DNA of 64,000 bases from Takakia lepidozioides (Eukaryota > Plantae > Bryophyta): positions 57,412,001 through 57,476,000 of the forward strand of contig CM060732.1 in assembly GCA_030704615.1 (NCBI GenBank). The letters run 5' to 3'. Position 1 is the first letter of the stretch, and every line of letters begins with the position of its first letter. Shown here one piece after another: positions 1 to 21,070 of the stretch. The notes under the pieces were generated by a model that had not been told where the DNA came from, did no database searches, and worked only from the letters and a program-made list of their open reading frames with translations. The translations under genes were made by a program, and so were the position numbers.

Positions 1-109
1 TTAGGGTATGTAGATTTGCTCATAACTTTGGTCTCTTCGTATTTCTCTGAGTTGTATGTTGATATTCACTCATTGAAGGGTCGTTGAAACTGAATATACG
101 TCCAAGTAT

Positions 110-220
110 ATGCATGATCCACCAGTGGCCATGATCACGGAGGTGTGTAGATTTACTGGGCGATTTACTTGGATTTATGTCGCTTAGGGATGGCGTGCAA
201 GCGGTGGAAAGCATTTCCAG
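110..220 (+). pseudogene. F-box motif remnant (frameshifted)
   Basis: MHDPPVAMITEVCRF followed, in another frame, by LDLCRLGMACKRWK resembles the F-box consensus LP.E+...I...L...DL.R...VCK.W; needs at least one frameshift. Confidence 0.3.
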
Positions 221-711
221 CAACTCCGAATTTATTTATTTTTTATTTTTTTCCCGTTTGTGTGTGCAACCAACTCACGTCGTCCTTCTATGTAACGCGC
301 ACTAATACGTTGCGCAATGACTTTGCAGACAATGAACGCGCGAGAAACACGTCGTGCGGCAGAGTGAAAAAAAAAATAACTGTATGCATCAATATTGAAA
401 TTGCTGAGTCGATTCCACAGTTTGGTTGACTATAAACATACAAAGTGGATTATACAAAGTGTGATGTCCCCATGTTGTGGGGCACGGAAACCTCCCCTTG
501 TTTATGCTTTAGAGAAAGAAGAATGGGAGAAAATTTGTAAAGAAAGAAGAAGAAAAAAACTGTATGGATCTGGATACAGACCCTGTGCTAGCGCCGGGAT
601 CGCAAGTCCTGAAAAAAACAAAGAAAAAAAATGACTACATGAAGAACGACGAGAAGCGCCGGTCCTTGCACAAGACATTTCCCACCAATACTGATGTGTA
701 ACTAGAACCGC

Positions 712-3700
712 CTAGTTTCTTCGAACGTCCAGCGGGACGAACGGTCTCGGATTTCTGAAACTCGGTTTCCCCTTTTTCTTTGCCGAATGTTGGCAACCGG
801 GACGTTGAATGTTTACCACGTTAGATCGATCCAGGGGTGGACGTGCTCTGACCATTGCAAAAATCTCCAACGGGACCGGCTTATCAGTCAACTGGATGAC
901 CTCGGTCTGCACGATCCCCGTTTCCGATGCCGGAGATCCCTCCCGCATGTCGACGGACGGGCCAGCCAGCGGGAAAACCTGTCCAAATGACCGAGCCGCC
1001 GAATCTCGTGACGCGTCCTTGTACGCGCCCAAACAAACCTCTACAACCCGACATTGCAATTTCTGCAACCAACAACGACGTCCTCCGTCAACCCTCGAAT
1101 TGTTTTGTATTTTGTTTTGTTATTTTATTCTATGTCTTGAATGTATTTCCACGATGAACTATGGTTACGCGATGGTGTGGCAGTGCGTACCACCATGACG
1201 TGCGTGGCGTCCCCCCCCCCCCCCGCGAATAAATTGATAGCCGTCATCCCGGAGGCTAGGAACTGGGACAGGGCATCGCTCGTCGTCCTAAGCGGCAGCT
1301 CCTGCTCGTGCACGCGAATCCCATCCAAGTCCCGGTCGTCGTCCGCGTCCTCGTCGAGGAACACGCTCATGATCCGCGCATCGGGTTTGCCGACGACTTT
1401 GGAACGCACCACCTCCGTCGCGTCACGTCCTTCCATAATGTGGAAAACGTAGTTCAACACCTCCACTGGGTCTGTGAGCATACCGCCCCGGAACTGTTCG
1501 GCATGCCGTGCTGGCAGGTAGAACCACTGCTCCATGTGGAATCCAGGCAGGCTCCGAACGTGCGCCACCAGCATGCGCGACGTCGCAGGGTCGGCAATGA
1601 CGCAAACTACCCCCACCCTCGCCGACTGCGTGACCACCAAGAGACTGTCAAAATGCACTGACTCCCAGCGCCCGCCGCCCTTCGCGGTGCTCACGAACAC
1701 TACGGCCGCGCCCGACAGAATTGCGCCCAGGTCCAGCTGATCTAGAGAATCCACCGCCAAAACCCGGAAAGCGTCGGCTGGGGAACGGCCCGCGGCGGCC
1801 GACCCCACGCCATCCATTTTGACGGCCCGCTTCTTCAACTCCAGCAGCCTGACAAACGCCTCCGGCGCGGACTCCTTCGCCACGATCGGCTTGGCCCTTC
1901 CCGCCAGGTACGCCTTCCCCAGCGCGCCCTCCAGCTGCGCCATGTCCGCGCGGTCGAGCTGGTAACGAGCCTTCACGTCCTTCCACTCCCCCAACGTGTA
2001 TGGGCGGAAGTTATCCCGGGAGGGCCGCGAATGCCCGCACTGCGCCATGATGTCGTCGACGACGAATTTGCGTGTCTTGCACTGCGTGCAGAAGGTCCTC
2101 AATCCGACGATAACTGCTTTGCCCTTCCCATCCCGGATGCTCAGCTTCCCGTCCAAAACCTTGTTGGCAACCTTGCGGATGGTGTGGTCATCCAGACCTT
2201 GCAAGCAGGACACCGACGTCTTGGATAGCGGCTCCAGCTCCTTCTTGTACGGGACGCCGTCCGGCCCCACCAGCTCCCCGCACTCCCACAGCCGGAACAC
2301 CCGTTCCCACAAGCTCCATGTGTCTTCGCTCACCTTCACCAGCGACAGCGCCTCCTTCACGCTCTCGCATCCCAGAATGGAGTTCGCCGCGGACATGAAC
2401 TCCTGCACCGGATGGGGAATCGTCAGCTGTATTGTTTTCAAAATTGCGGCTGGCGGGAGAGTATACGAACAAGACAAATTACAACAACAACAATCGACGA
2501 TTGACGTACCGTCCACCTCGCGCCATCTTGAATAGACGGCCGCCTCCGCGAGTGGTAAAACTCTCGACAATGTTTCACCTTCTGCGGGAACGTGGGCTCG
2601 AACGAGTTGTAGGAATTCGGCCGGTTCAGCAGTTTGGACAGTTTGACCAGCCTCAAATCGTCCGTGTTGTACACCACCTTTGCGTTCCACAGTCGAAACG
2701 CGTCCCCCGTTCCTTCCACACAAGCCAATTCCTGCAGCGTTGTGCACATGGTTATCGTCAGCAGAACCCAATCCCACCCTGCCCCACCCCACAACCGGAA
2801 CTATCACTCGCACCGAGAAGAAAAAAAAAACTAAATAAATAAAACATCCGATGCACATCCTACAGACCTTGGCCGCCATCGCAGTATGTTGACCGCCGAT
2901 CACGAAGAACTGGCCGGACGCAATTTCTGCCCATGACGAGGGCTGATCGGGATGCAAGCCATCTGAGCCTGATCGTCGGGGTAGAATGTACAGTGTCATC
3001 CTCTGATCGATGTCGACACAGCTCACGAGCCGGGACTTGATCTCGTCCTTGTGATCCACGTTCATCGGCCGATACACCATGTTGGCAGGCGCCGTGTCAC
3101 AGTTGTGCACGTCGACGCTCACAGCCGGGGAGTCCATCCCAAACGGGAACATGTTGCCGAACTCCGGCCGCAATTGAGCTTTCATCTCGCCGCTCCTGCA
3201 CATGTCGAAGGTGTGGCCGAACTTGGGCGGCATCTTCCCCCGAGAATCCGATGCCCCAGTGGCTACCGCACCCTTCCTTTTGCGTGACGGCGTCGTCACG
3301 GGCGGAACGGGAGTCGGACACATGCGCCGCCAATCTCTCATTACCGCACGCATAACATCCTCCGGAATCCTCCCCGGAGGCGGGACAGTGAATCCGGCCA
3401 TCACCGCCGCAGGCATGGTGTCCGTGTCCATCCTACCGACTTCGTCCACGAAACAGAACACCTTGCCCTCTCGACCGACCTCCCTGATGAACACCGCTAT
3501 AGACCCCTGTGTGTTTTCCAGCGAAACCACGTCGCAAAAACTCAACGTCTTCACTGACGACGAACCTCGATGGAACAGAAACAGCACCTTGTCGTCGTGT
3601 AGCTCCAAACCCCACCCGGTCTCACACGGTGACATATTGTACACTCCGTCGTGTGGCGTGCGGAACCCAACGCCCTTCCCAACCAGAAACGTTCCCGAAA

Positions 3701-3812
3701 TGTCAGAAGAAAACAACATTCTGGCCTGCATCGGTACCCTCGGAACATCGTCGTCCGCACACTGACCCGGTGGGAACATCGTGCTTGACCGAACATCAAA
3801 CGGGATCATCAC
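712..3812 (-). CDS. ParB/Srx-like domain fused to a degenerate N4C/N6A DNA-methyltransferase fold (~909 aa, 4 exons)
   Basis: Exons 3812-2868, 2731-2510, 2402-1191 and 1062-712 are all GT-AG, phase 0 and stop-free. ParB-like YRPMNVDH...FFVIGGQHTAMAAK|EL. The C-terminal LPLRTTSDALSQFLASGMTAINLFAGGGGDATHVMV|KLQCRVVEV matches MTase motifs X-I-II (VLDPFAGSGTT..A..LGR.FIG.E). VFVSTA occupies the expected DPPY position. Confidence 0.7.
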
Positions 3813-5772
3813 ACTAGAAACGACAATGGCGAAACAAAAAATATCAGATTGAAGAGGGAAATACGCATGTCCATTTCCATATATATATATAACGGTGAAT
3901 GTTTATTACTGAAGTTAAACGAGCTAGAGTGATGATAAAATTCCCTCGGAATTGAATTACAGTCGCGGCCTCTGTCCATCAAGTCATCCATCCATCCACC
4001 AGTGTTGTCATAAAGCAAAATAATGGTTTAAAAAAAGTAAAAGTAAAAGAGTGACAATGAATATCTCGGGTTCGCCCTCACCGAAAGGTGTGTATGCCTT
4101 TTGAAGTGTTGGGTGACAGGCATATAAAGACCCCTCGTCCGGCATACGAACCGTACATAGGCCGCTGACATACGATGATATGCGCGTACATGTGTAGGAG
4201 CGTGTGCGCGACTTCCTTGTCAGCGCCTCGAGCATGCAAACAAGATGAGGATGTGTATATAAGGAGAGCAACGTCCAAGGAGAGAATTGAAACACATCAG
4301 CGGGACCATGCTTTCTATGGACGGGAACGACGATGAGGTCGCTCGGCAAGCCGGCACTGGCATCCCGCAAGGGAGAAGGCGGCAAAAAATTCGCTCTCCA
4401 GCCATGGACACAGGCGACCGTCAGATGTTTTGTAACGAACGAACACGTTCTGCACTTGTGGCCAACAACAAAACACGATACGATTGCAAAGAGGCGCAAG
4501 TTGACGATCGGCCCTCGATTTCATCCCGATGCAACCAATGGTTTTTCAGTTCCGATTCTTGTTGAATCATACGCACAGCGCAAGCCCGTATCCATCGCCA
4601 AATAGGAGTGTATGGAGTATGGTCATCTGTATCACACCGTATCGGGTACTTGGTCATTCCTGAATATTGGAAAATTATTTTAAAAAATAAAATTAAAAAG
4701 TCCGATGGACGGATGGAGGTAATCGGTGTCATGTGAGGGGAAATGCCTGGGCCCACGTGTCCGATTTGCCCACGTTTTGCTCCGCCTTCCTCTGCACCAG
4801 GAAGTACACACATGGCGCTCCATAGGCACTCAGTTCCGGATGATAGACCTTCCGTTCCATGAGACGGAATGTATTGTCTGCGAATTATCCCATATCGATT
4901 GCCCGTATTTAGCACCTTGTATAGTATATAAACGGGGGTGAGCTGCAAGGGATTCGAGGGTGGGCTTAGGGTGTTCTTGAGCTACATGCACGTGGTGTCA
5001 CGCGGTCATTAATGCCCGCACAAATATTATACAACGTTTCTCTCTATCAAGTTCCACACGGTTCACATACTCGGGTTCAGCAAGTTGGGGAGGGGAGGCC
5101 ATAGGATGTCGGCTGGCCAGGGTGAAGGTCTCCAATTAAGCACGAATGCCATACAATCCACAGTCGATATGGAGCATGGCAGGGTTCTGGATGGGCCGGG
5201 TACTCCGCACCTGCGGAGGAACGATCCCTCATCCAGCGTCGTCGAGGAGGACCGCCTGGCGACGGTGGTTTGGCCCGGTATCGGGTGGTCGCGGGCGCAG
5301 TCTATGGTCATAATGGGGGCTCGGCGTCTGGCATGGATTCCCAGAAGATTGCAGCCAGGAGTTGACACAAGCGGTGCGCGGCTCGTTGGCATGGCTACGC
5401 CGACGGTGGACGATCGGAAGGGAGTAGATAGAGGCGCCGTCACCCGGATATCTCGGATATGTGAGGCGAAGGAGTGCGCGTGCAAGTTTTTCGAGTGACG
5501 TGCTACTAGTGTGTTTTGTATTATCGTTCCTAGCGGATTGTCGCCTGGTCGACTATAATTTTCTTTTTTCACGGATGTTTTGCTTTCCCCTCTCGTGATA
5601 CAGTGGCAACTCCTCTGTTTATTTTGTTCTCATTGTTACATAATGCTTTTGAAACAAACAATTGTAATAACTATTCAGTCCGTTCAATATAACGGACTCG
5701 GTTGATGATATGAAAGGGTGTATTGTATAATATTTTTTTCCCACAACATTCTAAACATGGTCTCGGGGGCCG

Positions 5773-5773
<1 letters not shown>

Positions 5774-5805
<32 letters not shown>
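5774..5805 (+). repeat. poly-G run (32 nt)
   Basis: Uninterrupted G run, counted directly. Confidence 0.9.
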
Positions 5806-5806
<1 letters not shown>

Positions 5807-6232
5807 GGGACAATGCACAACACAATCCGAGTTCATGAGAACAAAACTGCGGCGCGGTTGTCCAAATGATGGTTGCATACCGATAGACAGTCGCTCAGAT
5901 ATTGGTAATCGGTACATGAGCTGCTAAATTGTGATAGTTCGGACCATTTTTAATTCTTTCTTGGAGCACTTAAAGTTGGAGGAGAAAGCGCCAATGATAC
6001 GGCATTGGGAATGTTCCGGGATTAGCAGAGTGTGTGTTTGCATTCGGTACAACTCACCATTGCCTCGACCTGGCCGCGGTTAGAGAACCGGGGGAAGAAA
6101 GAACGCGATTGCCCACTATAGGATCGGTATTTAACAGGTTGATGTACATGTATTGAGGGGAAACAGAAAAATTTAACGAACAATAAAACAATAAAAATGC
6201 AAAAACAAATGGTACTCATCATGATCCAGTCA

Positions 6233-7873
6233 TTACTTCGGCGCCCCGCCCCTATTCGAATTTCTTTTCCGTTTCTGGCGACCCGGTCCAACGGGATGAG
6301 GAGGGTTGGAAGGACCCTCCTCGACGTTGAGATTCGTCATCAAATCCCCCCGCTCTGATACACAACCTCCTGCGTCGGCGGGATGTTCGCCGGCGGGACG
6401 GTCATCGGAGGATGGTGCCGCACATGGTCTCGCCGGATCGTGACGGCGCGGCTCAACGCGGCGTGCTTGGACATTCAATGTCCATGCAAGCGTGTCCGCT
6501 ATGCTCTGCATTCTCAGCTTCCTTCTCCACACCTGTTTGTCGAGCATGTCCAACTCACGCCGAAGGTCTTCAACTTCGGAATCGGTCTCTTCGCCGCCGG
6601 CTGCCAGTTGAACCCGTGTTTGGTCCGGTTGGAACGCGATCATATGGGTGTCAATTGTGTCCGTGCTGCCCATCCCGGTGGACTCGTCTGCGGAAGACGA
6701 CGGTTCTTCAGCGCGCGCCATCGACTGTCGAAGGCGGTCGTTATCGGCTCTGAGGTCGGCAATCTCTCGCTCTTGTTGTTGGCGCTGGGCCTCACGGGCC
6801 TCCGCGTCCTTCTCCAGCTGGAACACCTTTTGTTCGAGACTATGGATATGCAGCGAAGAACCGTGACCCTCTCCTTTTAACCTCTCTCTCATATGCATGG
6901 TTTCGTGTTTGGCGATGTCTTCAGAGTTCAAACCCAAAAAAAAATCCATTGCAGGCTCGAATTCCGGATGTGGCGGGAGGGGCTCGCGGTCCGAACATGG
7001 CGAGGGGTAGCAGAGGTCCTCCATCATCAAAGAAGGTAATGAATCGTTCCACAAGGATTGAGGATCGAGCTCGACCACGCTGGTCTCGGTCTCCAGTACT
7101 GCGGGATTGAGGGCTCCGACCCCGGGCGTTGTGGATGTCGATGGAGCTGCATTCTCTACCTCATTCAGATCGTGGGCCTTCGTCGAGCCACCGCCTTTGG
7201 TGCGAGGACTCAAGGATTGGGTCGGAGTCCGTGACGAGTCCAATTGCTTGCATGGCCCGCCCTGCTCCAAGCGCGGTGGGATGCCTCCGCTCGCAGGGCT
7301 CCCGTATCGGAGGTTTCGGAGGATGAGCGTGATGGCAGCCCCCGCGTACGAAGACTTCCAACCACAGACCACGTCCCTGAATTCGTTAACGGCGCGATTC
7401 GTCTTCATGCACATGGACTGCATGAGGCCCTTGACGAGGGAGGCATAGTCGGGATGGAGGGAATCTGCTACGTACCCTTGTCCGCTCACAAAGAGTTTGG
7501 ACCCTTGACGGAACATGGTTGTTTCGAGCTCGTGGCCGGGCTGTCTTACTTTCCCACCGACGACGCCGTTTTTTGGGAGTAGGAATACTCGGGCAATGAG
7601 GTCGTCATCGATGCGTTTGCACTCTCCACCGACGTCCACCCAATCTTGTTGAACGTGATTGAGGAACTCCATAACCGGTTGTTGGTCGATCATCGTCCAG
7701 TCGAGACCCACGAAATCGCGGAGGCCCGCTTGTTCAGTCATCCGGACGTGTGGATCAGTGAGCAGTCCCGCCATTGCTGTGACGCGATTCAACACGAAGT
7801 CTTGGCAAGGCGCCATCGCATAGCCTAGATCGACGAGCTCTTGGTGCAACCCGCCAGGGATACGGTCAGTCAA
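6233..7873 (-). CDS. Transposon-associated protein (plant transposon/Athila-ORF1-like N-terminal domain + coiled coil)
   Basis: 546-aa ORF. GLRDFVGLDWTMIDQQPVMEFL...VGGECKRIDDDLIARVFLLP fits the plant transposon-protein pattern; C-terminal heptad-rich region; paralogous to 8014-10122. Confidence 0.55.
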   Translation of the reverse strand: MTDRIPGGLHQELVDLGYAMAPCQDFVLNRVTAMAGLLTDPHVRMTEQAGLRDFVGLDWTMIDQQPVMEFLNHVQQDWVDVGGECKRIDDDLIARVFLLPKNGVVGGKVRQPGHELETTMFRQGSKLFVSGQGYVADSLHPDYASLVKGLMQSMCMKTNRAVNEFRDVVCGWKSSYAGAAITLILRNLRYGSPASGGIPPRLEQGGPCKQLDSSRTPTQSLSPRTKGGGSTKAHDLNEVENAAPSTSTTPGVGALNPAVLETETSVVELDPQSLWNDSLPSLMMEDLCYPSPCSDREPLPPHPEFEPAMDFFLGLNSEDIAKHETMHMRERLKGEGHGSSLHIHSLEQKVFQLEKDAEAREAQRQQQEREIADLRADNDRLRQSMARAEEPSSSADESTGMGSTDTIDTHMIAFQPDQTRVQLAAGGEETDSEVEDLRRELDMLDKQVWRRKLRMQSIADTLAWTLNVQARRVEPRRHDPARPCAAPSSDDRPAGEHPADAGGCVSERGDLMTNLNVEEGPSNPPHPVGPGRQKRKRNSNRGGAPK

Positions 7874-7879
7874 GCCGCA

Positions 7880-7945
7880 TCAGGGTTTGGGGTTTAGGGC
7901 TGGGCTGCGCTGCATCCGGACGTACGCATAGATGGGCCCGCCGTT
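7880..7945. promoter_or_regulatory. Candidate bidirectional promoter with telo-box-like and site II (TGGGCY) motifs
   Basis: AGGGTTTGGGGTTTAGGG plus TGGGCT and TGGGCC in the short gap between two divergent ORFs. Confidence 0.3.
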
Positions 7946-8013
7946 CAATTCCGCGTCATCATTAAGGCGCGCCAAAAGCCGCCCCCCCCCCCCAAACCGG
8001 TCGTTTAGTTGGC

Positions 8014-10122
8014 GTGGTTCGCACACTCTCCTGTTCGCGTTTTTCTCGGGCAATGGCACGAAGGCGACTCTGTTTCACACGACCCTGTGATGCCTGTAAG
8101 TGGTCCGGCCATACAAAAGAGCCTGACGTAGGAGACCTGAAGATCATGGGGCTGTACGAGTTTTTGGTGTGCATCAATTGGTCGTATTTCCATCTCGGGT
8201 GGTGCAAGGAAATGTTGTGTGGAATGGACATTGCGACCATGTGTGCAACCTTCCGCGGGCGCGAGATCAAGTTGACGCCGTTGAAAGCTGGGTGCGCGAG
8301 CGGGGGCCCGTGGAGAGGGGATTCGTGCACCGCACCCAGAGACAACGCGCTCGCGCAGATCATTTTCCTTGCCCATGATGCGGGGTGTGTTTCCGAGCGC
8401 CAAGCAGGGATGCTCGTCCGGGCAGCCAGGGGGGAACGGGTGGGATGGGCGGTGCACCTCCACGGTCTGATCAAGGCCGCCATGCGGATGGTGGTAGAAG
8501 ACGGGCCCCTGTTGGTGTGCTACGTTGGCCCGCACTTGACCCACATCCTGGGGCATGCGATAGGAGACGATGAGCCGACGGAGGCGTTATCCTTCTTTCC
8601 CGGCTCCGGGGAAGGGCGTCCGGTTCGTCCGCGGACATTGCTCATCCGTCCCCCTCCACAAACTGCGTTCAGCCACGTGGCGCCGCGGTCCGGGGAGGGT
8701 GACCTAACCCCCCCGCCTGGCGGCTCGGGGGCTAATTCGCTACAGACTTGCGGTCTTGCCCCTACCTCTCTCGCTCCTGGACGCTCCCAGCGAACGCTTG
8801 GGATGGAGGAAGTTTTCCAGACATGCATCGTGTTGGAGAGGTTTGCGGGTTTGGCGGAGGAATACAAGGCGTGGATAGTCGATGCCTCCCTGCGCTTGTT
8901 TCTGGAGTCCATCGATTGGAAGTTTATCAGTTCCTCCGTGTGCGAGGAGTTTGTAAAGGGGTATGATGTATCAAAACGCACGTTGGACATGGGAGGGCAG
9001 ATCGTCTCCATCGACAAGACCCTGATGAAGACTGTGTTTGGTCTTGATGCCGACTTGGGGTTGGAGGTCACCGAGCAGACATGGGCCCCGCATGCCGTTG
9101 AAGGTCTCTTCCCCGAAGCGGCCGTGTGTGCCGAGGGGAGCCGTCTTGATTTGGGCCGCTGCGGCAACAAGTGTGAGGTCTTGATTGCGCTCAACAACGC
9201 CGTCTTCATGGCGCCTGTCTTCGATTTCGATCCAGCGTCCAAGGGTTTCATGGAAGCCGTGCACGCCTACATCTTGGTGCAGTCCCAGAGCGGATACGTG
9301 TTCAACTAGGCAGAGTACGTCCTCTGCAATCTGACGTGCGAGTTGGAGAGGTCGAAGTCGGGTTTGCAATCCCTCTCGTTCAGTAGCGGCATCGGCTGCC
9401 ACATTTGCCGCATAATCAACGCGTTGCGACTCCCTTACGACGACAGCGACAGTGAGGCGGCCATGGACATCGACGGGCAGGCGGACGCTGGTGTTGTCGG
9501 CGGGATGGCATTGCCGCAGGGCCCGGTTGGAGCTCGGTTGGATGTGATGGCATCGCCGCAGGGGCCGGCTGGAGCTCGGTTGGACGTGATCGTCTCCTGT
9601 GATCTAACCCGGATCGCGGAGCGGGCGGTGTCATCGGCCACAGAAACGTTGGCATCCGCCAAGCGTGGTATGGAAACGGCGAATTGGTTCCAGCGGTCTG
9701 CCGACGATATTCTGGCGACGATGCGGGCTTAACTGGAGAAACGTGTCCAGGTCGTTGAGGATAAGCTGGAGGCTGAGGAAGAGCGGTCGAGGAGGTTGGT
9801 CGAGGATATGGAACGAAAGTGCAATGATACAGAAAAAGTTTTGGATGCGGTCTTGAAGGACAAGGATAAGCTTCGGGTAGAGAAGGATAAGGTCGTGGCT
9901 GACAATGGGAGGCTCCGGGTACAGAGGGATGAGGCCGTGGCTGAGAATAAGACGCTCCGGGCAGAGAGGGATAAGGTCCAGGCTGAGAATGAAAAGCTCC
10001 AGACGAAGACAGATCGTTCGAAACCGACTGGATGCGATCATTCGCGGTCGCATCGACGTTCCACACCCGATGAGTATAGGAGTCGTGACATGCAAATGTT
10101 TGACAGATCAAACCAACGGTAG
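8014..10122 (+). pseudogene. Transposon-associated protein with two copies of the same domain + coiled coil, two nonsense codons
   Basis: ORFs 8014-9309, 9343-9732 and 9796-10122 share one frame, broken by TAG (9307-9309, in FN*AEY, likely NWA) and TAA (9730-9732). Domain copies GLYEFLVCINW..FRGREIKLT and SLRLFLESIDW..MGGQIVSID; 42-bp repeats at ~9503-9586 and ~9865-10000. Confidence 0.65.
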
Positions 10123-10471
10123 GTTTGCATGAGAGGGGTTGTGTGTGGGAGTGTACATATCATTGTTAGTATCCACACATTTTGGGAAATGCTCATCGTT
10201 TTCATTGAAAATGAAATATCCCTCCTCATTGGGTAAATAAAGAGTTTTGTTTCGACATGCCCATAGACAAGTCCTCTTTCACCTCTCTACGAGATGGAAA
10301 AAAAAATGAATGTAAACGGAAACTGTTTAAAAAAATAATAATGTCCGATGTCGTTGCAGGGTTCGTCATCCCTTCCACACGGTGATGGGGGTCTCCGCCG
10401 AGAAGGTCGTTCGTCGCCGGAGCCTCTCTAACAACTGCATGTCAAGTTTACGAAACGTATTTAGTGACAAT

Positions 10472-13400
10472 TCATTCCGATTGATTTGTTTGCAAAAGTG
10501 TGGGAAGGGGTGAAGTACGTACGACCTGAGATAGGTTGGGCAACTTCTCAACCCATTCGCGTAGTTTGAACCATGCCGTGATCAGGTGATCATATCCAGC
10601 AGGGTCGTGCGGAAACTGGGAACATTCCCAGGCATCGACCAACCAGACGTTGTGTAGGGGATCGTGTCCGGTTTTGACGACGTTGCAATAGCCCATCTGC
10701 CGCTACAAACGTGAACTTGTCACTGTCGTGATCATAATCACGAATCAGGAGGGTGAGTGGGAAATGAAAATATTAGTGCACAGAGGAAGGTTGCGGATGG
10801 AATACCGGTCGACCGATGCAGGTTTCCTTCGGTGGCATGTACGTGGTCGATTCCTGGCAGAAGCGAATTGTGAGCATGCCCAGATCGGTTCTGCCGTCGT
10901 TATGTATGTCGTCGCAGAGATACAGATGTGACCAAGGCGTGTCTCCGACCGTGCCAATATGTACGACTAGACCAACTCCATCGAATTCACTGCATGACGT
11001 CTCAAATTCAGATGAAAGATGAAAGAAATGTGAAAATCAAAATAAAAGTAAATAACTCTAGTGGCTTACAGTTTCCCACTTGTTTGTCAAAAGTAGGCCC
11101 GCGCATCTCGGTGGCGTTGGTTGTCGGCACCGGAATGAAGTCCTGCCACCCCCACACATCACGTTTGAGCCTCGCGCACGTTAAGTCGGGATGGCATCGT
11201 CATTGGTCATTCGTAATGGGCTCACCTGAAGAGGGCCGTTTCGGTGGTCGAAAGGCGCCGCCATTTTCCCTCGTCGTTGGATTCCATGTGCACCATGTCC
11301 GGATCAGACGATGGAGTTGCATGGGCGCAAGATCGTGTATAAGGTAGATGCCGCCTTCTTCGATGTGCGGAGCCTGCACATGTTGCCACCCACGTGTCAC
11401 CTTTGTACACATGACGTTGGAACCACAAGTAAACCGTGGGAAGGTCGGCATGCGACAGACCTTATGGCTGGCAGAATAGGAGGTCACCATAGCCCAGCAC
11501 CATGTGGCGGATCGCCTCTTTCTGAAAAAATCGTTCGGTGACCGTATTAGCGATACTACGTTGCCGATCTTTATTTTGCGGAATCGGTCGACGCGCCTGG
11601 TGACCACCCCTGCCGCCTCTATCGCCTCCAAGATACCGTTGTCCATGACATCGCACTTAACTTCCTGCATCCATCCATCACCGCCGAGCCCCTCCTGTTA
11701 AAGGGGTTATGAGGGGCAGAATGGGAGGCTTTTGCAGGTACCCCTATTTTGAGAACGAGACCATCACCATGGCGTAGAGTCTTTGTTCATCACCCTCATG
11801 ACAGTAAGGTCTAGGAACCATGAAGGACCATGAGCCGTCCCGATCGAAAACCTGATATCGAAAAAATAAATAAAAGGGAACGTTCGGTCGAATTTACAGC
11901 GGCGTACCTCGCGGAGACACAAGTGGTTGTTGAGGGCCACTCGGTCGCTCGGAGTCAACCGATCGATGGCATGTGCGGCCCCCCTTGTGAACAACACGGC
12001 GCTCAAGCTTCCGTTTCCGTCCAGTTCGGCCACGCGGTCCCGGGAGATTCGTTCTAGACGGCTTCTCGCCGCCTCCACGACCTTCGTACGCCTGTTTATT
12101 GCTTCGAATGTCAGTCTCGACATTGACCCATACGTCTATGCCATGGAATTGCAGGGTATGGTAAGATGTCCATTCAACCTTTCTTTGAAACGTCGGTCCT
12201 TGATATGTTCCAGTTCCAGACATCTTGCCATTCCGTGTGTCCCATCCGGCAACCTGGCACATATACGGCTGTGAGTTACCAAAACGATCGTTAAAACAAT
12301 CATCCGTATCAATTGGGTTAGATTCAAGGTTGGCCCATACCTCTCTTGGTACATCGTCGGATATACCCTCTCGACGGCCGCCAAAACCGACCAGACGGGC
12401 CCTCCGCATTGCTTGACGCATCGTAAGGACAATGGATGCTAAGGCCCGGTAACTCCTCACCCCGACGCATAAAATAATAATAATGACAATTGTTAGGCTG
12501 AGAAATTACTTTTCAAAATAACGTAAAAACAAACTAGCAAATCAGCGTTGTCCTTGGAAATTTAAAAAAAAAACAAAAGTGGTATTGTATGTGCAACGTA
12601 CAAAAACCTAACCGTTCGTCCCACGGGACCCGTCGTGTACCGTTCATATGGATCGTCAGCCAACACCTATCACGCACCTTCACCCCGGACCCGGAGGTAA
12701 GGTAAGGTATTAGTATGCCGTTTTATTTATTTTGTATTTATATTTTTCCATATCAAACCCGTCCACGAGGCCAGGTCAGAATACCTACTTACTTGTAAAG
12801 GGTGGAGGGGTTCGTCGCAACTTCCGTTGTATTGTGCGCCTTGGACCTGTAAATTCCGACTCGGTCATTTCGGAGCGGTCTCTAATCGGTCTCTAAACAA
12901 ACAATGCAAAACAAAATGGAAAAAGGAAAAAAAAAAAAAACCCCGCTTACCCACAGTTTTTGTCCGCTGAAAATCTTCTTCTGTTCGATCAATGCGGTTA
13001 TAAAATAATCTGTTCGCACCGTCAAGCAGTACCTGTGGAATACTACCACACGTGTCACCGTCCAACTGTATCAACTTTTAGCGGTCAGCAGGTTTTGGGG
13101 AACCGATATATTACCATCCGGCTGTCACCTCCAGGTCGATTGTTTCACGGCCCATTTGCTTCATCCAGTGCCTGATCGCCGTGACACACACTATCATCGC
13201 ACGCATCGACGAGGCTCGTTTCTCAGTGATGAGCTTGATAGTCGAAGACTGCTCCTAGTACGTTTCTTTCACGAACCTGTCCCCCGGGGGGAAATTCTGT
13301 TATATTCCATTTCCATACGGAACGAGGCTTAAAATAGAATATGTACGTGCACCTTACCTGTTATTGAGTTGGTGAATCACTTTGGACAGCGTGAGAAGGC

Positions 13401-14476
13401 GGTTGGCGTTTACATGGGGAAAACTCCGTTCGTGCGACGCTAGTTTCCACACGATCAGTCGGTAATGGTTTACCAACCATCTGCCATGGATTCATAAACG
13501 TCAATGCCCCGTCGCATACATGTTGAATAAAAAATAAAAAATAAAAAGTGGTTGGATGAGATTTGGACTCAACTCAAACGGAACGGTGTCCGCTGTCTTG
13601 GCTATTAGTAATGCGTGAACATGTCGGATCTCGGCTTTGCTCCCGTCTGTCCGAGCGACTTCGTAGTTGGCAGAAGTTGTTGCGTCGAGTCGGAGTATAT
13701 CATCCGGCACGAACCCGGTCTGCGGGCACAGGGGTACAACTTTATGAGGGAAGACGAGGGAAGGGGGGAGGGGAAACCTCGTGGTCGTATTAACTCACCG
13801 GATTTTCCTGGTGCGGCCGTGTTGGGTAAAACTCCCTCATGCTGGGAAGTTTCGTAATTGTTCCTAGGGGGGATGGTACATGGATCTTCTCCAATGCTGT
13901 CTTTGTAGCCGTCACGACGTTGGTTTGAGATTTACCGCTGCATTCAGGAGCCGACGTTTTCCATTATATTTATAAAAATGTTATTATTATTATTTCCTTT
14001 ATTGAAGAAATGTTTTCACGGAAACCAATAGAGTATTCAGTGAACACTCGGGTGAGTGAAACAGTACCTGGGTCGGGGACGTTTGAACGCTGGCGGGTCA
14101 TTACGGCTTGTGGTCGCTTTTGAATTGTCGAGAATGGATGCCAATGTGATTCTCGCACCGCGGACACTTTGCAAGGATACCTTGATCGGCGTTTCGTTGG
14201 CAATCTTGAAGCCGGTCGTTTTGCATGCCATTCGGTGTTGCTGGACTCTCATAGAATTATTAGTTTCTCAATCCGACGGGATTGCAAAACAAGGGAAAGG
14301 AAAAAAGAAAAAAGAGACGGATTGGCCGATAGGACGTGATCGGTACCGGGGGAGGAAACAGGAATAACAACAATAAAACAAAATGACTTTGAATAACTTT
14401 GGCGGTACTTACCGATCGCCGAACGACGTTCGGTTTGCTCTGCGGGCTCTACATCGGAAAGGTCCACAATCTTCAT
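10472..14476 (-). pseudogene. BRCA2: Compact, diverged BRCA2-like gene (1 BRC repeat, FxxP motif, helical domain, OB1, tower/OB2, OB3), many short exons, at least 3 in-frame stops
   Basis: Spliced translation gives GFKIANETPIKVSLQSVRGARITL (BRC), FKRPR, WLVNHYRLIVWKLASHERSFP, LEVTAGW|YCL..IFSGQKLW|VQGA, IHMNGTRRVPWDERLGF, LRCVKQCGGPVWSVLAAVERVYPTMYQER, IEEGGIYLIHDLAP, EFDGVGLVVHIG and GYCNVVK..VWLVDAWE, colinear with plant BRCA2. Stops at ~13256-13258, 12439-12441 and 11200-11202. The start codon and two junctions are tentative. Confidence 0.85.
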
Positions 14477-14784
14477 CGTGGATGTTGCCGACGCTACAGT
14501 TGATCGGCGATGTGTGTGTATGCTGGATGTTGGATCCTCATAATGTTGGATCCTCTTGTGAAAGCGGTGACTCAGCGAAAGACATATGTGGTTCTTGTCG
14601 TTCTTCCCCTGCCCCGCCACGACGGGGAATGGATGGATTCATGGATGAATGTTGTTCGTCCGAAATTTGGTGGACGTGGAGGACGTTGTCGCGCCGGCAT
14701 ATATGTATATAAACTTTCTTGCGGTTGAGCGGGAGGTTGGTTCTGTTTGGAGCTTTTTCCTCCTCCTCACTGTGAACTAAGCGG

Positions 14785-16034
14785 ATGGACGACGATACTT
14801 CTCTTATCAAAGATGATGTCCGGTTGTCTGATGTCGACTATATTGCGGCGTTCAAACAATACATAGAATGTCATCACAAAACAGATATTGACGACCTTCT
14901 CATCGCTGATGACGATTCTAGACATTACTCGCTGCTCCTCGAGTGCGTTTTTATTTTTATTTTTATTTTTCCCCGTTTCTTTAGAGAACATACTTGCTGT
15001 TTGAGTTCCGTCCATTTCAATGGATTTCAAGGCCAGGATGTGTGTGTGTGTGGGACGTTCAGGTGTGCCGATTTGTTGGATGCGTGTCCAAGGCTCGCTC
15101 ATGTGGTGTATTATTATCCGGAGAAAATGATATTGTTGTTCAATTCGGCCGCGCGGGAGGTACAGGTATCCCCGCCCTTCACCATCAGTCACACATACAA
15201 CGCAAGGTGTGCATCGTCGCAGTGGATGTGGTCTGTGTCAGCATCTAACGCATTCGATCGTCGTGTCGTCAGACGACGGCCTGCGCTTTACGCGAGGGCG
15301 ATGAGTGGCGATCTGTGGTGCATGTCCGGTTCGTCGTTCAAGGCTCGGCCATGGAATGCACAGGTAGGTATTCCGTTGCGGTTACGTAAAACGATGCCTG
15401 GAAACCAGCCTGGAATGTCGTACCGCATCAGAAACGGTGGGAAAAACCTACCTGCGCATGGCCGTGCATCCTGTTTTGCACATGGTGTGTATTCCGGTTT
15501 GCTAGAGTGCTCTACCTCGTTGGATGATCACTCAAAGTAGGGGCGGCGACCACCGCGGCAAGCACTCGCGAGGCTTGCAATAAATATACATATGTGCGTA
15601 TGAATAGACAATGTATGAGGATGCGGCAGGCAGACGGGTAGTGTGACGGCATCGCTCGTGTACTTGCAGAAACTCACCCTAACGTCGGTCAGATCCGCTT
15701 CCACCATGTCGGACATCTGATCACGGTCAATGGCGTCGTCATACGTGCCGGCAAAATCAAAGTGTCGGAATCCGTCAGAGAGTATGAGTGCGCAGTATGC
15801 AGCCACAGGTTTTGTTTTTATTTTGTTTTCCTTAATTTTTCTTGTATTCATTTCATTTCCACTTCATTTAGGTTGTAACGTGTTAGAAATGAATACGTAA
15901 TTTCCATAAAAGTGACGGTGCCACGAGAACGGTGGTGCACTGGCTGGCTGATCGAATGGTGTGGCAGGTTCAGCGTTTTCCCCGACATCATAAGTGTTAA
16001 TTCGTTCGAACTCCCACATGTGTGCCTTTCCAAG
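14785..16034 (+). pseudogene. MCM9: MCM9-like N-terminal half (helical + OB/Zn domain), 5 exons, truncated before the AAA+ domain
   Basis: Exons 14785-14942, 15063-15165, 15273-15363, 15670-15808 and 15968-16034 (GT-AG, phase-compatible, no stops) give FKQYIECHHKTDIDDLL..RHYSLLLECADLLD, VHVRFVVQGSAMECTETHPNVGQIRFHHVGHLITVNGVVIRAGKIKVSESVREYECAVCSHRFSVFPD..C, matching the MCM9 N-terminus. No downstream MCM exons found. Confidence 0.85.
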
Positions 16035-16247
16035 GTAATGGTTTGCTGTAGATGTTTTTGAACATTGTCTGCGGGTGTGTTTTGGTAGAACCCGGTTCAT
16101 TGTATGGTTGGTTTGTGGAAGCGGACGGAAAGATGTGGCGGTGGGAAATTCATGCGCGTAGACTAATACAAGAGTATAATCATGCCACTAAGGGCAGGGT
16201 GTTGTTGGATACCACTGACAGATCCCACTGGTCTGTTGGGGTTGCAG

Positions 16248-17143
16248 ATGGGAACTCACTACAAGAAAGCCTTTGGAATTCCTTGAGCCCAGCTCATTGG
16301 GGGCCCTATTGTGGATGATATTCCCTGCTCATCAACCATGGAGCTGCAGCCTATTGTGGATGATATTCCCTCCTCATCCAACATGGAGGAGCGGCCTATT
16401 GTGGATAGTATGGAGGATTACGTGCGAGCGATGCTTCAAGAAGGACAATCTCTCCAGGCTGTTGCAAGTGCACTCGGTGTTCAGGACGTTAGACAGTTAA
16501 AGAGGCTAATGTCCAGAATTACAGGCGTCCCTTTCAAAGCCTACCACCAGCTGTCTCTTGAAGAGTTGTGTACAAAAATTCAAGAGGTGGTTCCAACCGA
16601 GGAGAATGGGGTGAACTGGGGCATTATGCAAGTGAAGGCTGCCCTGGCGAGGAGGGACATCAGGGTGTCTCGCATCAAAATCGCTTGTGCATTGAGGACC
16701 ATCTCCGGCTACCATTACGACCGGAGGCGTAGAGCACAAAATCTTATCAGTGGCCAATACAACGTCATAAAGCCGTTGGCATTGTGGCACATAGATTGCA
16801 AGTCAAGTCCCTTGTTTGCATTGAGAGACCATATGCTCCAAATGATTTCTACTTTCACTTGTTAGCTGATGCATTTCTTTTCAGTAATACAGTTTCCATA
16901 CCTTCCACATCGACCAATATAAAATGCATATTGTTTGTCCTTGTAGCTTATCACAAGCTTGCGATGTTCGGAAATATCCGAATACATGCTGGAATTGATG
17001 GGGCCTCCCATTTCCTGCTGTGGCCAAAGGTAGCCGACAATAAGAGGGCAGAGACAATATTTGGTGGATGTATGGAGGCAGTAAACAAGTTTGGATCGCC
17101 ATCCCGGATATCGGTACACCATGAAGCTGCGCGGACAGATTGA
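16248..17143 (+). mobile_element. IS3/IS481-related eukaryotic (IS3EU-type) DDE transposase, truncated
   Basis: HTH region NWGIMQVKAALARRDIRVSR..YNVIKPLALWHID, then a GC-AG intron (16798-16946), then (S)YHKL..IHAGIDGASHFLLW..NKRAETI..AVNKFGSPSRI. The second catalytic D and the E region are not found. 45-bp tandem repeat at ~16305-16410. Confidence 0.7.
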
Positions 17144-17592
17144 TCACTAGCCGTAAACATAACTCTTCTATTTACACGAGACCATACAAGTATAACATGA
17201 AGTAACATGAATTGATAACATGTGGTTTTATTGTTCAATTTTATTGAAGTCGGAAAAAGTTCAAAATATAAAATGAAAATTAAAATGAAAATGTAGCTTC
17301 ACAAAACTGACAAAAGCCAAATGCATCATGATAATCCTTGGCTAGCTGCACCATGTGTGATTTTTCAGAGAACTTTCTTGATAGAGTAGGACAACATTTG
17401 CCCTACATTTCCTTCCAACATGTTGATACCCGGGCCTGCAGAACTTAGAAAGAACAAAGAAATTAGCGAATGAGGCTATGGATCTACAAACTGAAGTTTG
17501 TGCAACTGAGACAAGCATGTTGTGTAACAGTTATTATTGTCCTCAGCCAGTACTCTGAAGCCATTTGTGGGCTGAATTGCAGGTGACCCAGG

Positions 17593-18138
17593 ATGTCTCA
17601 AGAGGAGCAGCAACCTGAATCCCAAAATGAGAGACCTGTTCAGGGAAATGTTAGGAGAGCTCCTAGAGTAGCTGTATTCCCTACAACAATCCAAAGTCCA
17701 AGTCATAGGTTTGGAACTCCCTATGGTGGTGGACCTACTGGGACAAGAAGAAGAGCACCTACCACAAGAGCACCTACGCCTCTAACCTTGTCTAGGAGGT
17801 TTTTCATATTGCCTCCTTCAACAGAGTGGAGAGCTACTGGCTCCATTCTTGGTCCTAGAGAGCCAGCTCCATGGCCAGTGGATCTACCTTCAGATCTTGT
17901 GAGCATTCCAGCTTCTTGGCGATGGGGTGGGGCAATCTTTCCTGAACAATTCGGCCCAGACATTGTAGAGCACAAGGTAGCAACATGCTTTGCAGCTGAC
18001 CACGGTCGCCCCCTACCCTCCCTTGTGTCAGGGTTGTTCTACAAACGCTCCCTCAAATCCAGGGGCTCTAGCAAGTACTATACACTAGAACCCTTCTACA
18101 GGAAGCTTGGACCTACAGACGGATTCTGCAGCACATGA
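17593..18138 (+). CDS. Hypothetical accessory ORF of the IS3EU-type element
   Basis: 181-aa ORF directly downstream of the transposase, same strand and same CpG-poor composition; no recognised domain. Confidence 0.35.
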   Translation: MSQEEQQPESQNERPVQGNVRRAPRVAVFPTTIQSPSHRFGTPYGGGPTGTRRRAPTTRAPTPLTLSRRFFILPPSTEWRATGSILGPREPAPWPVDLPSDLVSIPASWRWGGAIFPEQFGPDIVEHKVATCFAADHGRPLPSLVSGLFYKRSLKSRGSSKYYTLEPFYRKLGPTDGFCST

Positions 18139-18694
18139 CAATGAATCCCTCAATGCCAAGTCCCTCAGAGACATTAAGCGATTCAGAGGAGGAAGCCCTC
18201 CCATTACCTTTGCCTCCATGTCTGCCACCAGCTCTCCCACCAGCTCCTCCGGCATCCACCTTAGAGCTCCGACGACGATTTTCAGGCTGCCCTCCTCCCC
18301 CGCCGGCCTCCTCCACGTCTACCGCCACCTACAGGTTCATTATACCCCTGTTTCCCTGGTTCAGCAGTCCACTAACATGAACTTGGAGTCCACCAACTTG
18401 GAGGTCATGTCAGATGCAATGAATCCAGGGTAAATCCAATTGCAAAAGAAAAATATGCACATATTATGCACGGACAGCATTGAGGAGACGACAACAACAA
18501 CGACCTCTACATATCTTTCTACTTCCGAGTGGTTTTTGGTCGACTGATAACTACCCTATCACACCCAAATGTCTCATACATGCAAAGGATTAACAATAAG
18601 ACTTATGCATTGGACCAACTAATTTGATTCAATTGTGACGAGCTACATACTTGGGAGATTGCCAACTAGGAATAAGGTGGGTTAGACAGCTCAC

Positions 18695-18801
18695 CTCCAA
18701 TCAACATCCAGCGTGCCTCCTTTTCGGCAGCTGCTGACATATAGTTGCGGCTAGGTTGGAGTACCATTCCCTTTGCAACTTCTAAAACTGCTGAAGGTAG
18801 C
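18695..18801 (-). pseudogene. Isolated exon resembling SWEETIE/HEATR5
   Basis: AG/GT-bounded 107-nt exon encoding (R)LPSAVLEVAKGMVLQPSRNYMSAAAEKEARWMLIG, resembling plant SWEETIE LP.SVLEV.K.ML....RN......EKEAGW.LL (recognised from memory). Confidence 0.5.
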
Positions 18802-19144
18802 CTGCAAGTGATTCATCCATCCACACATTTGTGTCCGTGTCGGTCGGCCCTAAAAGTGGCAGTTTTAAGGTGGTGAGGGGGGGTCCTCTGTGAGCGCCAG
18901 AACATGGCGTAAATTGCATTCCGTAAATGTGATGTGCAACAGCACCACCCCACCCCCCCCCCAAGGGAAACGACGGGTCTACAGAGGCCAGAGTTAATGG
19001 TGTTTCCACCGTGGTTTAATGGCGTTTCCCTTGTTTGTGCCCTACCGTTAACGTACAAGAACGGGCCTCTAAAACACACGGAAACAGACACCAAAACCGG
19101 TTACGTTTCATTTACGTGAATGAATTATATCATAGTGTTTGCAT

Positions 19145-19760
19145 TCACGCCGGTGTGATGAACGACAACCGCGACATGTCATCATGGACAGACGAGTAGG
19201 GGTCTCGAGCAGAGTCTCGTTGATGTATTCGATGATCTCGTAGCGGATGCCTAAGGCGTCGCCTCTGTTGATACGTTTGAGATCGTCGTAGTTGTCCGAC
19301 GCCGCCGTCCGACGCAGCCGATGGGTCGTCGTCCCGGGCAATGTAACGCGCCATGAATGCCATAACGTAGTAGGCGCATTCCCAATCGGCCTTTTGCCGG
19401 GCACCGTGTTTATTTTTGACAGGGAGAGACGTCACGGCGTTGGATTCGGGGTCGACCATATGTTGGTAGATCAATTTGTGCAGTTTGACCGTGTCGTCGT
19501 CGGCAGGTTTATGTTCGAGCGAATTGAAGTGCAGGAATCGCCTCCCTATTTCCCATACGATCAAACTCCAATGATCCCTGCCAACAAAATTAGAGTTGGT
19601 TGTCAGAGTCGAGTGCCATGCCGCAAATCTCAGCATGTACGTCCAAGGGGTTGGCATGTACGTAACAATTACCTGGAAAACACGGGGAACAGAACGGCCT
19701 GCAAGCCGCTCAATTCGAACGAGGGCGCCGCGTGTGCGATGTCTTCGGGTTTCCTGATGA
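19145..19760 (-). pseudogene. Ulp1/SENP (peptidase C48) remnant
   Basis: Intron 19672-19578 joins AVLFPVFSR|DHWSLIVW; HFNSL (catalytic D replaced by N); RQKADWECAYYVM carries Q and C. Upstream part disrupted. Confidence 0.75.
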
Positions 19761-20344
19761 AACTTGGTCTGGGACTTCAAGAAATTTCCATGTTTGTTAG
19801 CATAAAACAACACACACACAAGATCCCTCAATCCTAATGAAACAAGAAGAATATGCACGTTTCTTTTGGAGTCGGTTCTGCCCATTCTTTCCTATTACAA
19901 GCAAACATTTGCATAACTGCTTGCTGGATGATAAGAGGATTGCGGATGCACATAAATGTTTGAAGTGTTGTTTATGCATTTTGGCGCATTACTATTATGT
20001 TTTCTTTTTGGAAAGCCAAACACTCTGGCAGAGCAAACGCTCACAAATCAGGTCCCTTCAATCATAGAGGAGAAAATAATCTCTTTCATAGTAACCATTA
20101 TACTCCTATCAAATGTCTACTATAAACCGTTGCATTATATCTATAATCCATGGTGTATATTATTTGGTAGTTGCCACCCTAGGCTATATGACGATCATGA
20201 TAAACCTTGACAACAATACTTATGCCAAAGAAAGATCTAATTTCAAATATTTCTCATCTACACATGAAGATTTCATCTTACGTCCGCTTAGAATCTACAA
20301 GTTTTCCAATGTGTGGCTTTATCTGCTTGCCAATCAATTACTAA

Positions 20345-21070
20345 CTATTGCAAAGGCGATCTTTTTGGATGACTTTGCTTCCGCTTGCGTATTTTTGTCA
20401 ATGGATCTGCATTCAAAACCCCTGTCGAGCTTCCAGCCAGCTTCGAGCTTCCATTTCCACATTCATATACTTGCAGAGTCTCGATTGATTCATGAAGTCT
20501 GGTTGCAGATATATGTGCTACAACGCTGACCATTGCTTCCTTGTTTGAGTCAACAAAGCATGATGAAGTTATAGTTATGTCACGAACTCGTTCATTGGGC
20601 TCAAAGTCTGTTGACAATGTAAGAGTCTGCAATGGGCTAATATTCTGCAAGCGTCGAATTTCTGAAATCTTACACTCCATGGAGCAGAATCGGAAGGTGT
20701 CAGATTTTTCACGATCACAACACTTTTTTGGGGCCCTTTTGTAAATAAAGACAGCAACTTTACCGTTGAATTTGCAACACTTAATCCAAGATATATCCAG
20801 CAGGTTTTCAATATCAACAATATTGACAGCGAGAACTCTGGATACTTTTCGAATCTGCAAGGTCTTGTGGTGCATATGATGTTTTAGATCCTCGCAACAG
20901 ATGGCAGGGCCCATACAGACTGTACAAAAATATTTCCGAATTCTGCACCCATGATCTTCATGTTCACAATCCTCAAAATATTTGTTTCGCATAAAAGAGT
21001 CCACCCATGCAGGTATTAAGGTGACATCCATGGAGTCATAGATCCCTCCTGTCCAACCAAGTTTGTTCAT
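20345..21070 (-). CDS. PLATZ zinc-finger transcription factor, diverged, no coding introns
   Basis: PAW...YFEDCEH..YFCTVC..AIC...HMHHKTLQIRK, DIENLLDISWI..FNGKVAVFI, FRFCSMECKI and C-terminal RKRK..P.RSP. Confidence 0.85.
   Translation of the reverse strand: MNKLGWTGGIYDSMDVTLIPAWVDSFMRNKYFEDCEHEDHGCRIRKYFCTVCMGPAICCEDLKHHMHHKTLQIRKVSRVLAVNIVDIENLLDISWIKCCKFNGKVAVFIYKRAPKKCCDREKSDTFRFCSMECKISEIRRLQNISPLQTLTLSTDFEPNERVRDITITSSCFVDSNKEAMVSVVAHISATRLHESIETLQVYECGNGSSKLAGSSTGVLNADPLTKIRKRKQSHPKRSPLQ

What the first reader, a model, noticed from the sequence alone, without database searches (positions are those of the whole stretch)
700..19790. CpG-rich ~19-kb island: a candidate giant mobile element carrying BRCA2, MCM9-N, ParB-MTase and Ulp1
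Seen: a dense, visibly CpG-rich block, unlike the host genes to its right, packs a ParB-MTase fusion, transposon-protein paralogs, a diverged BRCA2, MCM9-N and a Ulp1 protease; most of these retain introns. Known: BRCA2 loads RAD51, MCM8-9 acts in homologous recombination, plant Helitrons carry RPA70-like OB folds, and MULE/CACTA elements carry Ulp1 proteases. Inference: a large element family has recruited host recombination and ssDNA-binding modules, to repair or copy itself or to modulate host repair. I know of no described plant element carrying this cargo. Its ends and its own transposase or helicase were not found in the window.
Basis: partly seen in the sequence, partly recalled or inferred. 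Interest (0 to 1): 0.92.

Follow-up and report, generated by a model that had tools for sequence, protein, structure and literature searches.

The report
Decaying plant transposon carrying mini-BRCA2
A transposon-like island in a moss-type plant genome carries its own shortened copy of the DNA-repair gene BRCA2 and half of its partner helicase MCM9, both now broken, which hints that such elements once used captured repair genes to copy themselves, but the element's ends and transposase were not found.

Summary
The CpG-rich island is real (CpG o/e 1.1, host 0.5). It runs off the window's left edge and is split by a separate CpG-poor insertion (16160 to ~18900). The BRCA2-like gene is a streamlined land-plant BRCA2: 18 exons, one BRC-like repeat, a full DNA-binding domain, and 17 introns matching Riccia BRCA2 in order and phase. 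It is now a pseudogene (two TAG stops, one frameshift). MCM9 is real but cut by the insertion, so 'MCM9-N' need not be a designed module. Ulp1 is weakly supported; ParB-MTase rests on motifs seen by eye. No termini, target duplication or transposase were found. The BRCA2-MCM9 block is single-copy at 31-mer level, but pieces of a second copy (83-91% identical) exist, and both copies show CpG decay. Two probable RNA runs hold nothing. Best reading: a dead copy of a giant accessory-gene DNA transposon whose BRCA2 cargo was long kept under selection, probably to drive homologous repair that recopies the element (0.5). The scan noted ParB-MTase elements many times elsewhere in this genome; BRCA2 cargo only here. 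Novel cargo, family status unproven.

The parts
1..16160 (.). CpG-rich island, left part; continues beyond position 1
   Evidence: CpG o/e 1.11, change point at 16160, none in 1-3000
712..3809 (-). Intact 4-exon gene (3809-2868, 2731-2510, 2402-1191, 1062-712; ~908 codons), ParB-like and amino-methyltransferase-like by motif only
   Evidence: All exons phase 0, no internal stop; VIGGQH and NLFAGGG motifs by eye; no DPPY-type catalytic motif; all database tests blank
6233..7873 (-). Single-exon 546-aa ORF: unnamed transposon-protein-like domain plus coiled coil
   Evidence: paralogous to second domain of the 8014 gene, 0/500 shuffles
8014..10122 (+). Paralogous gene with two such domains and a coiled coil; one 702-codon frame broken by TAG 9307 and TAA 9730
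10366..14476 (-). Mini-BRCA2 pseudogene: 18 exons, 2279 nt coding; one BRC-like repeat, helical, OB1, OB2 with tower, OB3; TAG 13255-13257, TAG 12439-12441 (or phase break there), 1-nt shortfall in exon 11373-11226
14068..14266 (-). Exon with the BRC-like repeat and an FKRP motif; corresponds to the 2.3-kb BRC exon of Riccia, shrunk to 199 nt
   Evidence: Position and phases match Riccia exon 4; BRC motif by eye, no Pfam hit
14785..16165 (+). MCM9 5' half, head to head with BRCA2-like; ends inside an exon at the nested insertion
16160..18900 (+). Separate nested repeat, CpG-poor, with HTH and rva_4 integrase core; right edge approximate (18830-18960)
   Evidence: Pfam rva_4 E 2e-7; repeat junction 16160-16167; CpG o/e 0.40
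19145..19774 (-). Ulp1/C48-like protease exons (His and Cys kept, Asn in place of Asp); upstream exons may reach ~20000
18900..19760 (.). CpG-rich island, right part; true right end not identified
   Evidence: change points ~18960 and ~19760; no terminus found

Best explanation
The island is a dead, partly deleted copy of a giant (over 20 kb) plant DNA transposon of the accessory-gene type (ParB-MTase-like gene, Ulp1, unnamed transposon proteins). Long ago its lineage captured a land-plant BRCA2 and an MCM9 as genomic DNA, trimmed BRCA2 to one BRC repeat plus DNA-binding domain, and kept it in frame while it diverged. Shown: gene identities, DNA-level capture (introns), streamlining, shared CpG-rich signature, recent lesions, second-copy pieces. 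Inferred: that the block moved as one unit, and that the cargo served the element. Most likely use: after excision, or a cut at the empty site, mini-BRCA2 loads RAD51 and MCM9 (with host MCM8) extends the D-loop, so the long gap is refilled from the sister chromatid and the element gains a copy. This copy no longer does so.
For: All island genes share CpG o/e 0.94-1.35, host exons 0.37-0.66. 17 of 17 introns match Riccia BRCA2 in order and phase; several exon lengths are equal. Identity to Riccia is 32%, against 40-44% for Riccia versus vascular plants, yet only three lesions in 760 codons: long divergence in frame, recent death. Second-copy pieces at 10450-10799 (91%) and 13698-13854 (83%, same intron, indels only in the intron); about half of the listed differences at 10498-10638 are CpG transitions, split evenly between the copies, so both decay from a CpG-rich ancestor. 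Ulp1 is known MULE cargo (PMC13317346); ParB and N6-MTase accessory genes are known in algal Plavaka, Mutator, Zisupton and Fanzor elements (10.1101/2025.02.11.637652).
Against: No TIR, TSD, CACTA or Helitron end, no palindrome array, no transposase. 10730-16195 is one unbranched contig at single-copy depth. Selection between the two copies is not significant (6 synonymous, 7 non-synonymous, omega ~0.45, p 0.13). No close relative among protein representatives, metagenome or viral contigs. No RNA contig. Splice sites were partly chosen with Riccia as a guide. The mechanism has no direct test.
Confidence: 0.5

Rival explanations
1. Passive Pack-MULE-like capture: a ParB-MTase/Ulp1 transposon picked up BRCA2 and MCM9 by accident, they never served it, and they are decaying.
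For: Both genes are broken and not seen in RNA. Pseudogenisation is the usual fate of captured genes (PMC13317346). Exon divergence between the two copies (13/137 nt) is about that of the neighbouring intron, and omega is not significantly below 1.
Against: A nearly whole 18-exon gene with a clean in-phase shortening of the BRC exon, extra protein divergence with only three lesions, and full adoption of the CpG-rich signature need a long time in frame.
Confidence: 0.25
2. The BRCA2-MCM9 segment, or the whole island, came by horizontal transfer from another streptophyte with CpG-rich genes and was never a working module here.
For: Composition differs sharply from the host; no close relative found; introns show a land-plant or close streptophyte source.
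Against: Other notes describe many CpG-island ParB-MTase elements in this genome (unchecked), so the signature needs no foreign donor; no donor was found.
Confidence: 0.13
3. It is the host's own ancestral BRCA2 (and an MCM9 duplicate) decaying among unrelated transposon insertions, a stage in the loss of the BRCA2 DNA-binding domain seen in mosses.
For: Physcomitrium, Ceratodon and Funaria BRCA2 lack the domain (PMC12412785); the host is moss-like; only this BRCA2 was noted genome-wide (weak); divergence is only moderately raised.
Against: Host exons are CpG-depleted and these are not; no MCM9 is called beside Riccia BRCA2 and its flanks share nothing with this window; another note places an MCM9 beside ICMT elsewhere (unchecked); the second copy is CpG-rich too.
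Confidence: 0.12

Closest known systems
Non-TIR MULEs with Ulp1 cargo (VANDAL / KAONASHI; PMC13317346, PMC5735166)
   Same: Large element, Ulp1-like gene, unnamed accessory proteins, no long TIRs seen, signature of past escape from methylation
   Different: No MuDRA transposase, motif array or 9-bp TSD found here; ParB-MTase-like, BRCA2 and MCM9 genes are not mentioned for them in the passages read
Red algal giant Plavaka/Mutator/Zisupton/Fanzor elements with PAG2 (N6-MTase-SET) and PAG3 (ParB-2OG oxygenase) (10.1101/2025.02.11.637652)
   Same: 17-19 kb scale; ParB-like and amino-MTase-like accessory genes that move between superfamilies, including Fanzor elements
   Different: Here both motifs sit in one gene, no SET or oxygenase, no palindrome array, and recombination genes are carried
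Pack-MULEs (PMC5861414)
   Same: GC-rich captured host gene sequence inside an element
   Different: Cargo here is a nearly whole, streamlined, strongly diverged 18-exon gene rather than recent fragments; no TIRs found
Plant Helitrons with RPA70-like OB-fold genes (own knowledge)
   Same: Element-borne ssDNA-binding OB folds with introns
   Different: The OB folds are BRCA2's, with helical domain and BRC-like repeat; no RepHel, no convincing hairpin-CTRR end
Canonical land-plant BRCA2 (Riccia KAL2619874.1) and minimal BRCA2s such as Ustilago Brh2 (own knowledge)
   Same: Same domain order; all 17 introns match Riccia; one BRC plus DBD like Brh2
   Different: ~760 versus 1699 codons, 32% identity, pseudogene, sits in a CpG-rich island

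Membership tests
BRCA2 family | Helical domain plus OB1-OB2(tower)-OB3 in order | tested here: met
BRCA2 family | BRC repeat | tested here: inconclusive
   FxxA-type motif by eye in the exon matching Riccia's BRC exon; no Pfam hit
BRCA2 family | Intact expressed reading frame | tested here: not met
   two TAG, one frameshift; no RNA contig, weak evidence
MCM9 | MCM N-terminal, OB and zinc-finger domains closest to MCM9 | tested here: met
MCM9 | AAA+ ATPase domain | tested here: not met
   gene ends at 16165; no continuation seen by eye in 18640-19160
MULE (incl. VANDAL-type) | MuDRA-type DDE transposase | tested here: not met
   none among island ORFs in the window; DNA left of position 1 not available
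MULE (incl. VANDAL-type) | TIRs or degenerate ends with 9-10 bp TSD | not testable with these tools
   left end outside the window; no match between 1-1200 and 19600-21600
MULE (incl. VANDAL-type) | Ulp1-like accessory protease | tested here: inconclusive
   Pfam C48 E 0.004, below cut-off; His and Cys present
CACTA/Plavaka | CACTA/G termini and Tnp2 transposase | tested here: not met
   no paired ends, no transposase in the window
Helitron | RepHel and 3' hairpin-CTRR | tested here: not met
   no RepHel; only hairpin-CTRR hits inside genes or of weak energy
ParB / beta-class amino-MTase fusion | ParB/Srx and N6/N4-MTase folds | tested here: inconclusive
   motifs by eye only; searches blank; single-sequence models pLDDT 37-38
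Mobile element family | Dispersed copies with the same gene order and an empty site | tested here: inconclusive
   two diverged second-copy pieces; main block unique at 31-mer level
Fanzor1-carrying element | Fanzor gene and omegaRNA inside the same element | not testable with these tools
   noted 1.6-4.8 kb left of the window (s1-479422, s1-480417), DNA not available

The most novel reading that the evidence does not exclude
A family of giant bryophyte DNA elements carries a self-contained cut-and-recopy kit: an RNA-guided Fanzor (noted just left of the window, unchecked) cuts the empty site, and element-encoded mini-BRCA2 and MCM9 steer repair into long-tract homologous recombination that copies the element back, while a ParB-MTase-like protein keeps it unmethylated. 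If the host is a moss with a DBD-less BRCA2, the element also preserves the DNA-binding domain that the host lineage lost.
Probability: 0.25. Interest if true: 0.87.

Novelty: new variant of a known kind. Interest (0 to 1): 0.6.

Why it matters
I found no paper on a transposon carrying BRCA2 or MCM9 (library incomplete). If the cargo proves selected, it would show an element supplying its own recombination mediator to bias repair towards recopying itself, and would give a natural minimal plant BRCA2. If the host is a moss, the gene also helps date the loss of the BRCA2 DNA-binding domain in mosses (PMC12412785). The value is limited for now: one broken copy, no ends, no transposase.

Tried and rejected
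ParB-MTase: word search whole and by domain (limited to 0.55-1.75 times the query length, and the ORF used reads through two introns and misses the true second exon), Atlas (DUF3723 at 0.75, lead only; blank), Pfam/NCBIfam/PHROGs, PDB, two single-sequence folds and fold searches, viral, bacterial, phage and plasmid scans: all uninformative. BRCA2 relatives: no hit above ~63% over the helical exon; named top hits are canonical BRCA2s; no island neighbour genes in 80 metagenome loci; none viral. A stop at 12136 and one at 11200, first taken as lesions, lie in introns. Stop-codon reassignment rejected: a frameshift and a TAA also occur. rva_4 rejected as the island's transposase: different composition, and it interrupts MCM9. 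No Rfam hit, no repeat or palindrome array (7, 61, 102). Exact look-ups of window proteins failed, so DNA left of the window could not be fetched. Host not named: run labels are coded.

Full report
Island. CpG o/e is 0.95-1.29 in each kb from 1 to 16000, falls to 0.3-0.55 at 16-19 kb, returns to 1.26 at 19-20 kb and averages 0.50 beyond 20 kb. Change points lie at 16160, ~18960 and ~19760; there is none in 1-3000, so the island runs off the left edge. The CpG-poor stretch is a separate repeat: it encodes an HTH and an rva_4 integrase core, and contigs from other loci join it at 16160-16167, the same place as the change point. All island genes share the CpG-rich signature (BRCA2-like exons 1.23, MCM9 1.21, ParB-like 1.13, Ulp1 1.35); host exons are at 0.37-0.66.

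Host. A non-seed land plant. The amidophosphoribosyltransferase exon at 51.7 kb is 90% identical to a metagenome exon that I recall as Sphagnum (JGI Ga0116227; from memory), 82% to Physcomitrium. The tree does not separate moss from liverwort. 5085 windows of 64 kb would be 325 Mb, the size I recall for Takakia; this is a guess only.

BRCA2-like gene. Searched exon by exon; the joined protein was not built. Pfam gives the helical domain (E 7.5e-12), OB1 (6e-4) and OB3 (6e-5); natural BRCA2 proteins align collinearly from 13632 down to 10547. The model has 18 exons (14476-10366, 2279 nt). Mapping Riccia BRCA2 on its locus shows 17 consecutive introns in the same order and phase, so this is a DNA-level copy of a land-plant gene (some splice sites were picked with Riccia as guide). 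Riccia's 2.3-kb BRC exon is reduced to 199 nt with one BRC-like motif (by eye). Identity to Riccia is 32% over 507 columns, against 40-44% for Riccia versus a fern and three angiosperms. Three lesions disable it: TAG 13255-13257 early in OB1, TAG 12439-12441 (or a phase break), and a 1-nt shortfall in exon 11373-11226. The source contig shows no other letter there, so they are not assembly errors. Strong divergence with few lesions means a long period in frame and a recent death (inference).

MCM9. Exons from 14785 match MCM9 best (PDB E 1.5e-5; Pfam MCM_OB 6e-5, MCM_N 0.015). The last exon ends in a stop at the junction with the nested repeat and no continuation was seen beyond it. So the gene may have been full length; 'MCM9-N' is what survives. 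Its middle exons were not fully resolved.

Other genes. 3809-712 is an intact 4-exon frame with a ParB-type VIGGQH motif and an MTase-type NLFAGGG motif by eye and no catalytic DPPY; every database and fold test was blank or uninformative. 6233-7873 is intact; 8014-10122 has two stops; their domains are paralogous but unnamed. The Ulp1-like exons reach Pfam E 0.004, below the cut-off.

Copies and expression. In the source DNA run, 10730-16195 is one unbranched 5466-nt contig at depth 38, so there is no near-identical second copy. Other contigs match 10450-10799 (91%) and 13698-13854 (83%, same intron, gaps only in the intron). Their lengths (1869, 1271) would tile 10730-13900, which suggests but does not show a collinear paralog. 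About half of the listed differences in the first piece are CpG transitions, four in each copy: both copies are now decaying from a CpG-rich ancestor, as inserted transposon copies do. Selection between them is not significant (omega ~0.45, p 0.13). An independent plant metagenome holds the region at ~99% identity. Two probable RNA runs hold none of it (weak). No close relative was found elsewhere.

Ends. No TIR, CACTA end, convincing Helitron end or palindrome array. Earlier notes (unchecked) place a Fanzor1 and a candidate omegaRNA and element end 1.6-4.8 kb left of the window, and describe many ParB-MTase MULE-like elements in this genome, some with Ulp1.

Mechanism. Best reading (0.5): a dead copy of a giant accessory-gene DNA transposon whose lineage kept a streamlined BRCA2 and an MCM9 to favour RAD51 loading and long D-loop synthesis, so that the gap left by excision or by a Fanzor cut is refilled from the sister chromatid. 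The roles of BRCA2 and MCM8-9 are established knowledge; their use by the element is inference. Rivals: passive capture (0.25), horizontal transfer (0.13), decaying host locus (0.12).

Comparison. It works like VANDAL/KAONASHI MULEs (Ulp1; PMC13317346) and the algal elements with ParB and N6-MTase accessory genes, which include Fanzor elements (10.1101/2025.02.11.637652), but it cannot be filed in any superfamily. BRCA2 or MCM9 as transposon cargo was not found in the papers searched. Three moss genera lack the BRCA2 DNA-binding domain (PMC12412785), which makes a full domain in a moss-like genome notable. Verdict: new variant of a known kind, interest 0.6.

Noticed in passing
window:16160-18900: Nested CpG-poor repeat with an HTH and rva_4 integrase core, three 45-nt repeats (16305-16411) and a second ORF (17593-18138); no TIR found; IS3EU-like is only a guess.
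   Followed up: partly
window:53809-55077: Fold-back element with long subterminal inverted repeats built from palindromic CAATTCAATTG units, GGAATTCCC ends; MITE- or MULE-like.
   Followed up: partly
window:35156-36274: Small element with 26-bp TIRs, GC-rich interior.
   Followed up: no
window:32482-33297: ORF on minus strand with a zf-C17orf113 zinc finger (Pfam E 5e-20), hAT-derived type.
   Followed up: partly
window:24180-26010: Cluster of RCI2/PMP3-like small membrane protein exons, at least two genes.
   Followed up: no
window:20345-21070: Single-exon, diverged PLATZ gene right beside the island; possibly a retrocopy.
   Followed up: no
window:9307, 9730, 12439, 13255: Three of four nonsense codons in island genes are TAG and one TAA, as expected from cytosine deamination at non-CG methylated sites (inference).
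   Followed up: partly
window:14219: The independent metagenome sample has a 1-nt deletion in the BRC exon (depth 4.8, may be an error).
   Followed up: no
L009:10001-13279: Intronless 1092-aa BRCA2 with BRC, helical and OB1 domains on a 30-kb JGI metagenome contig; organism unknown.
   Followed up: no
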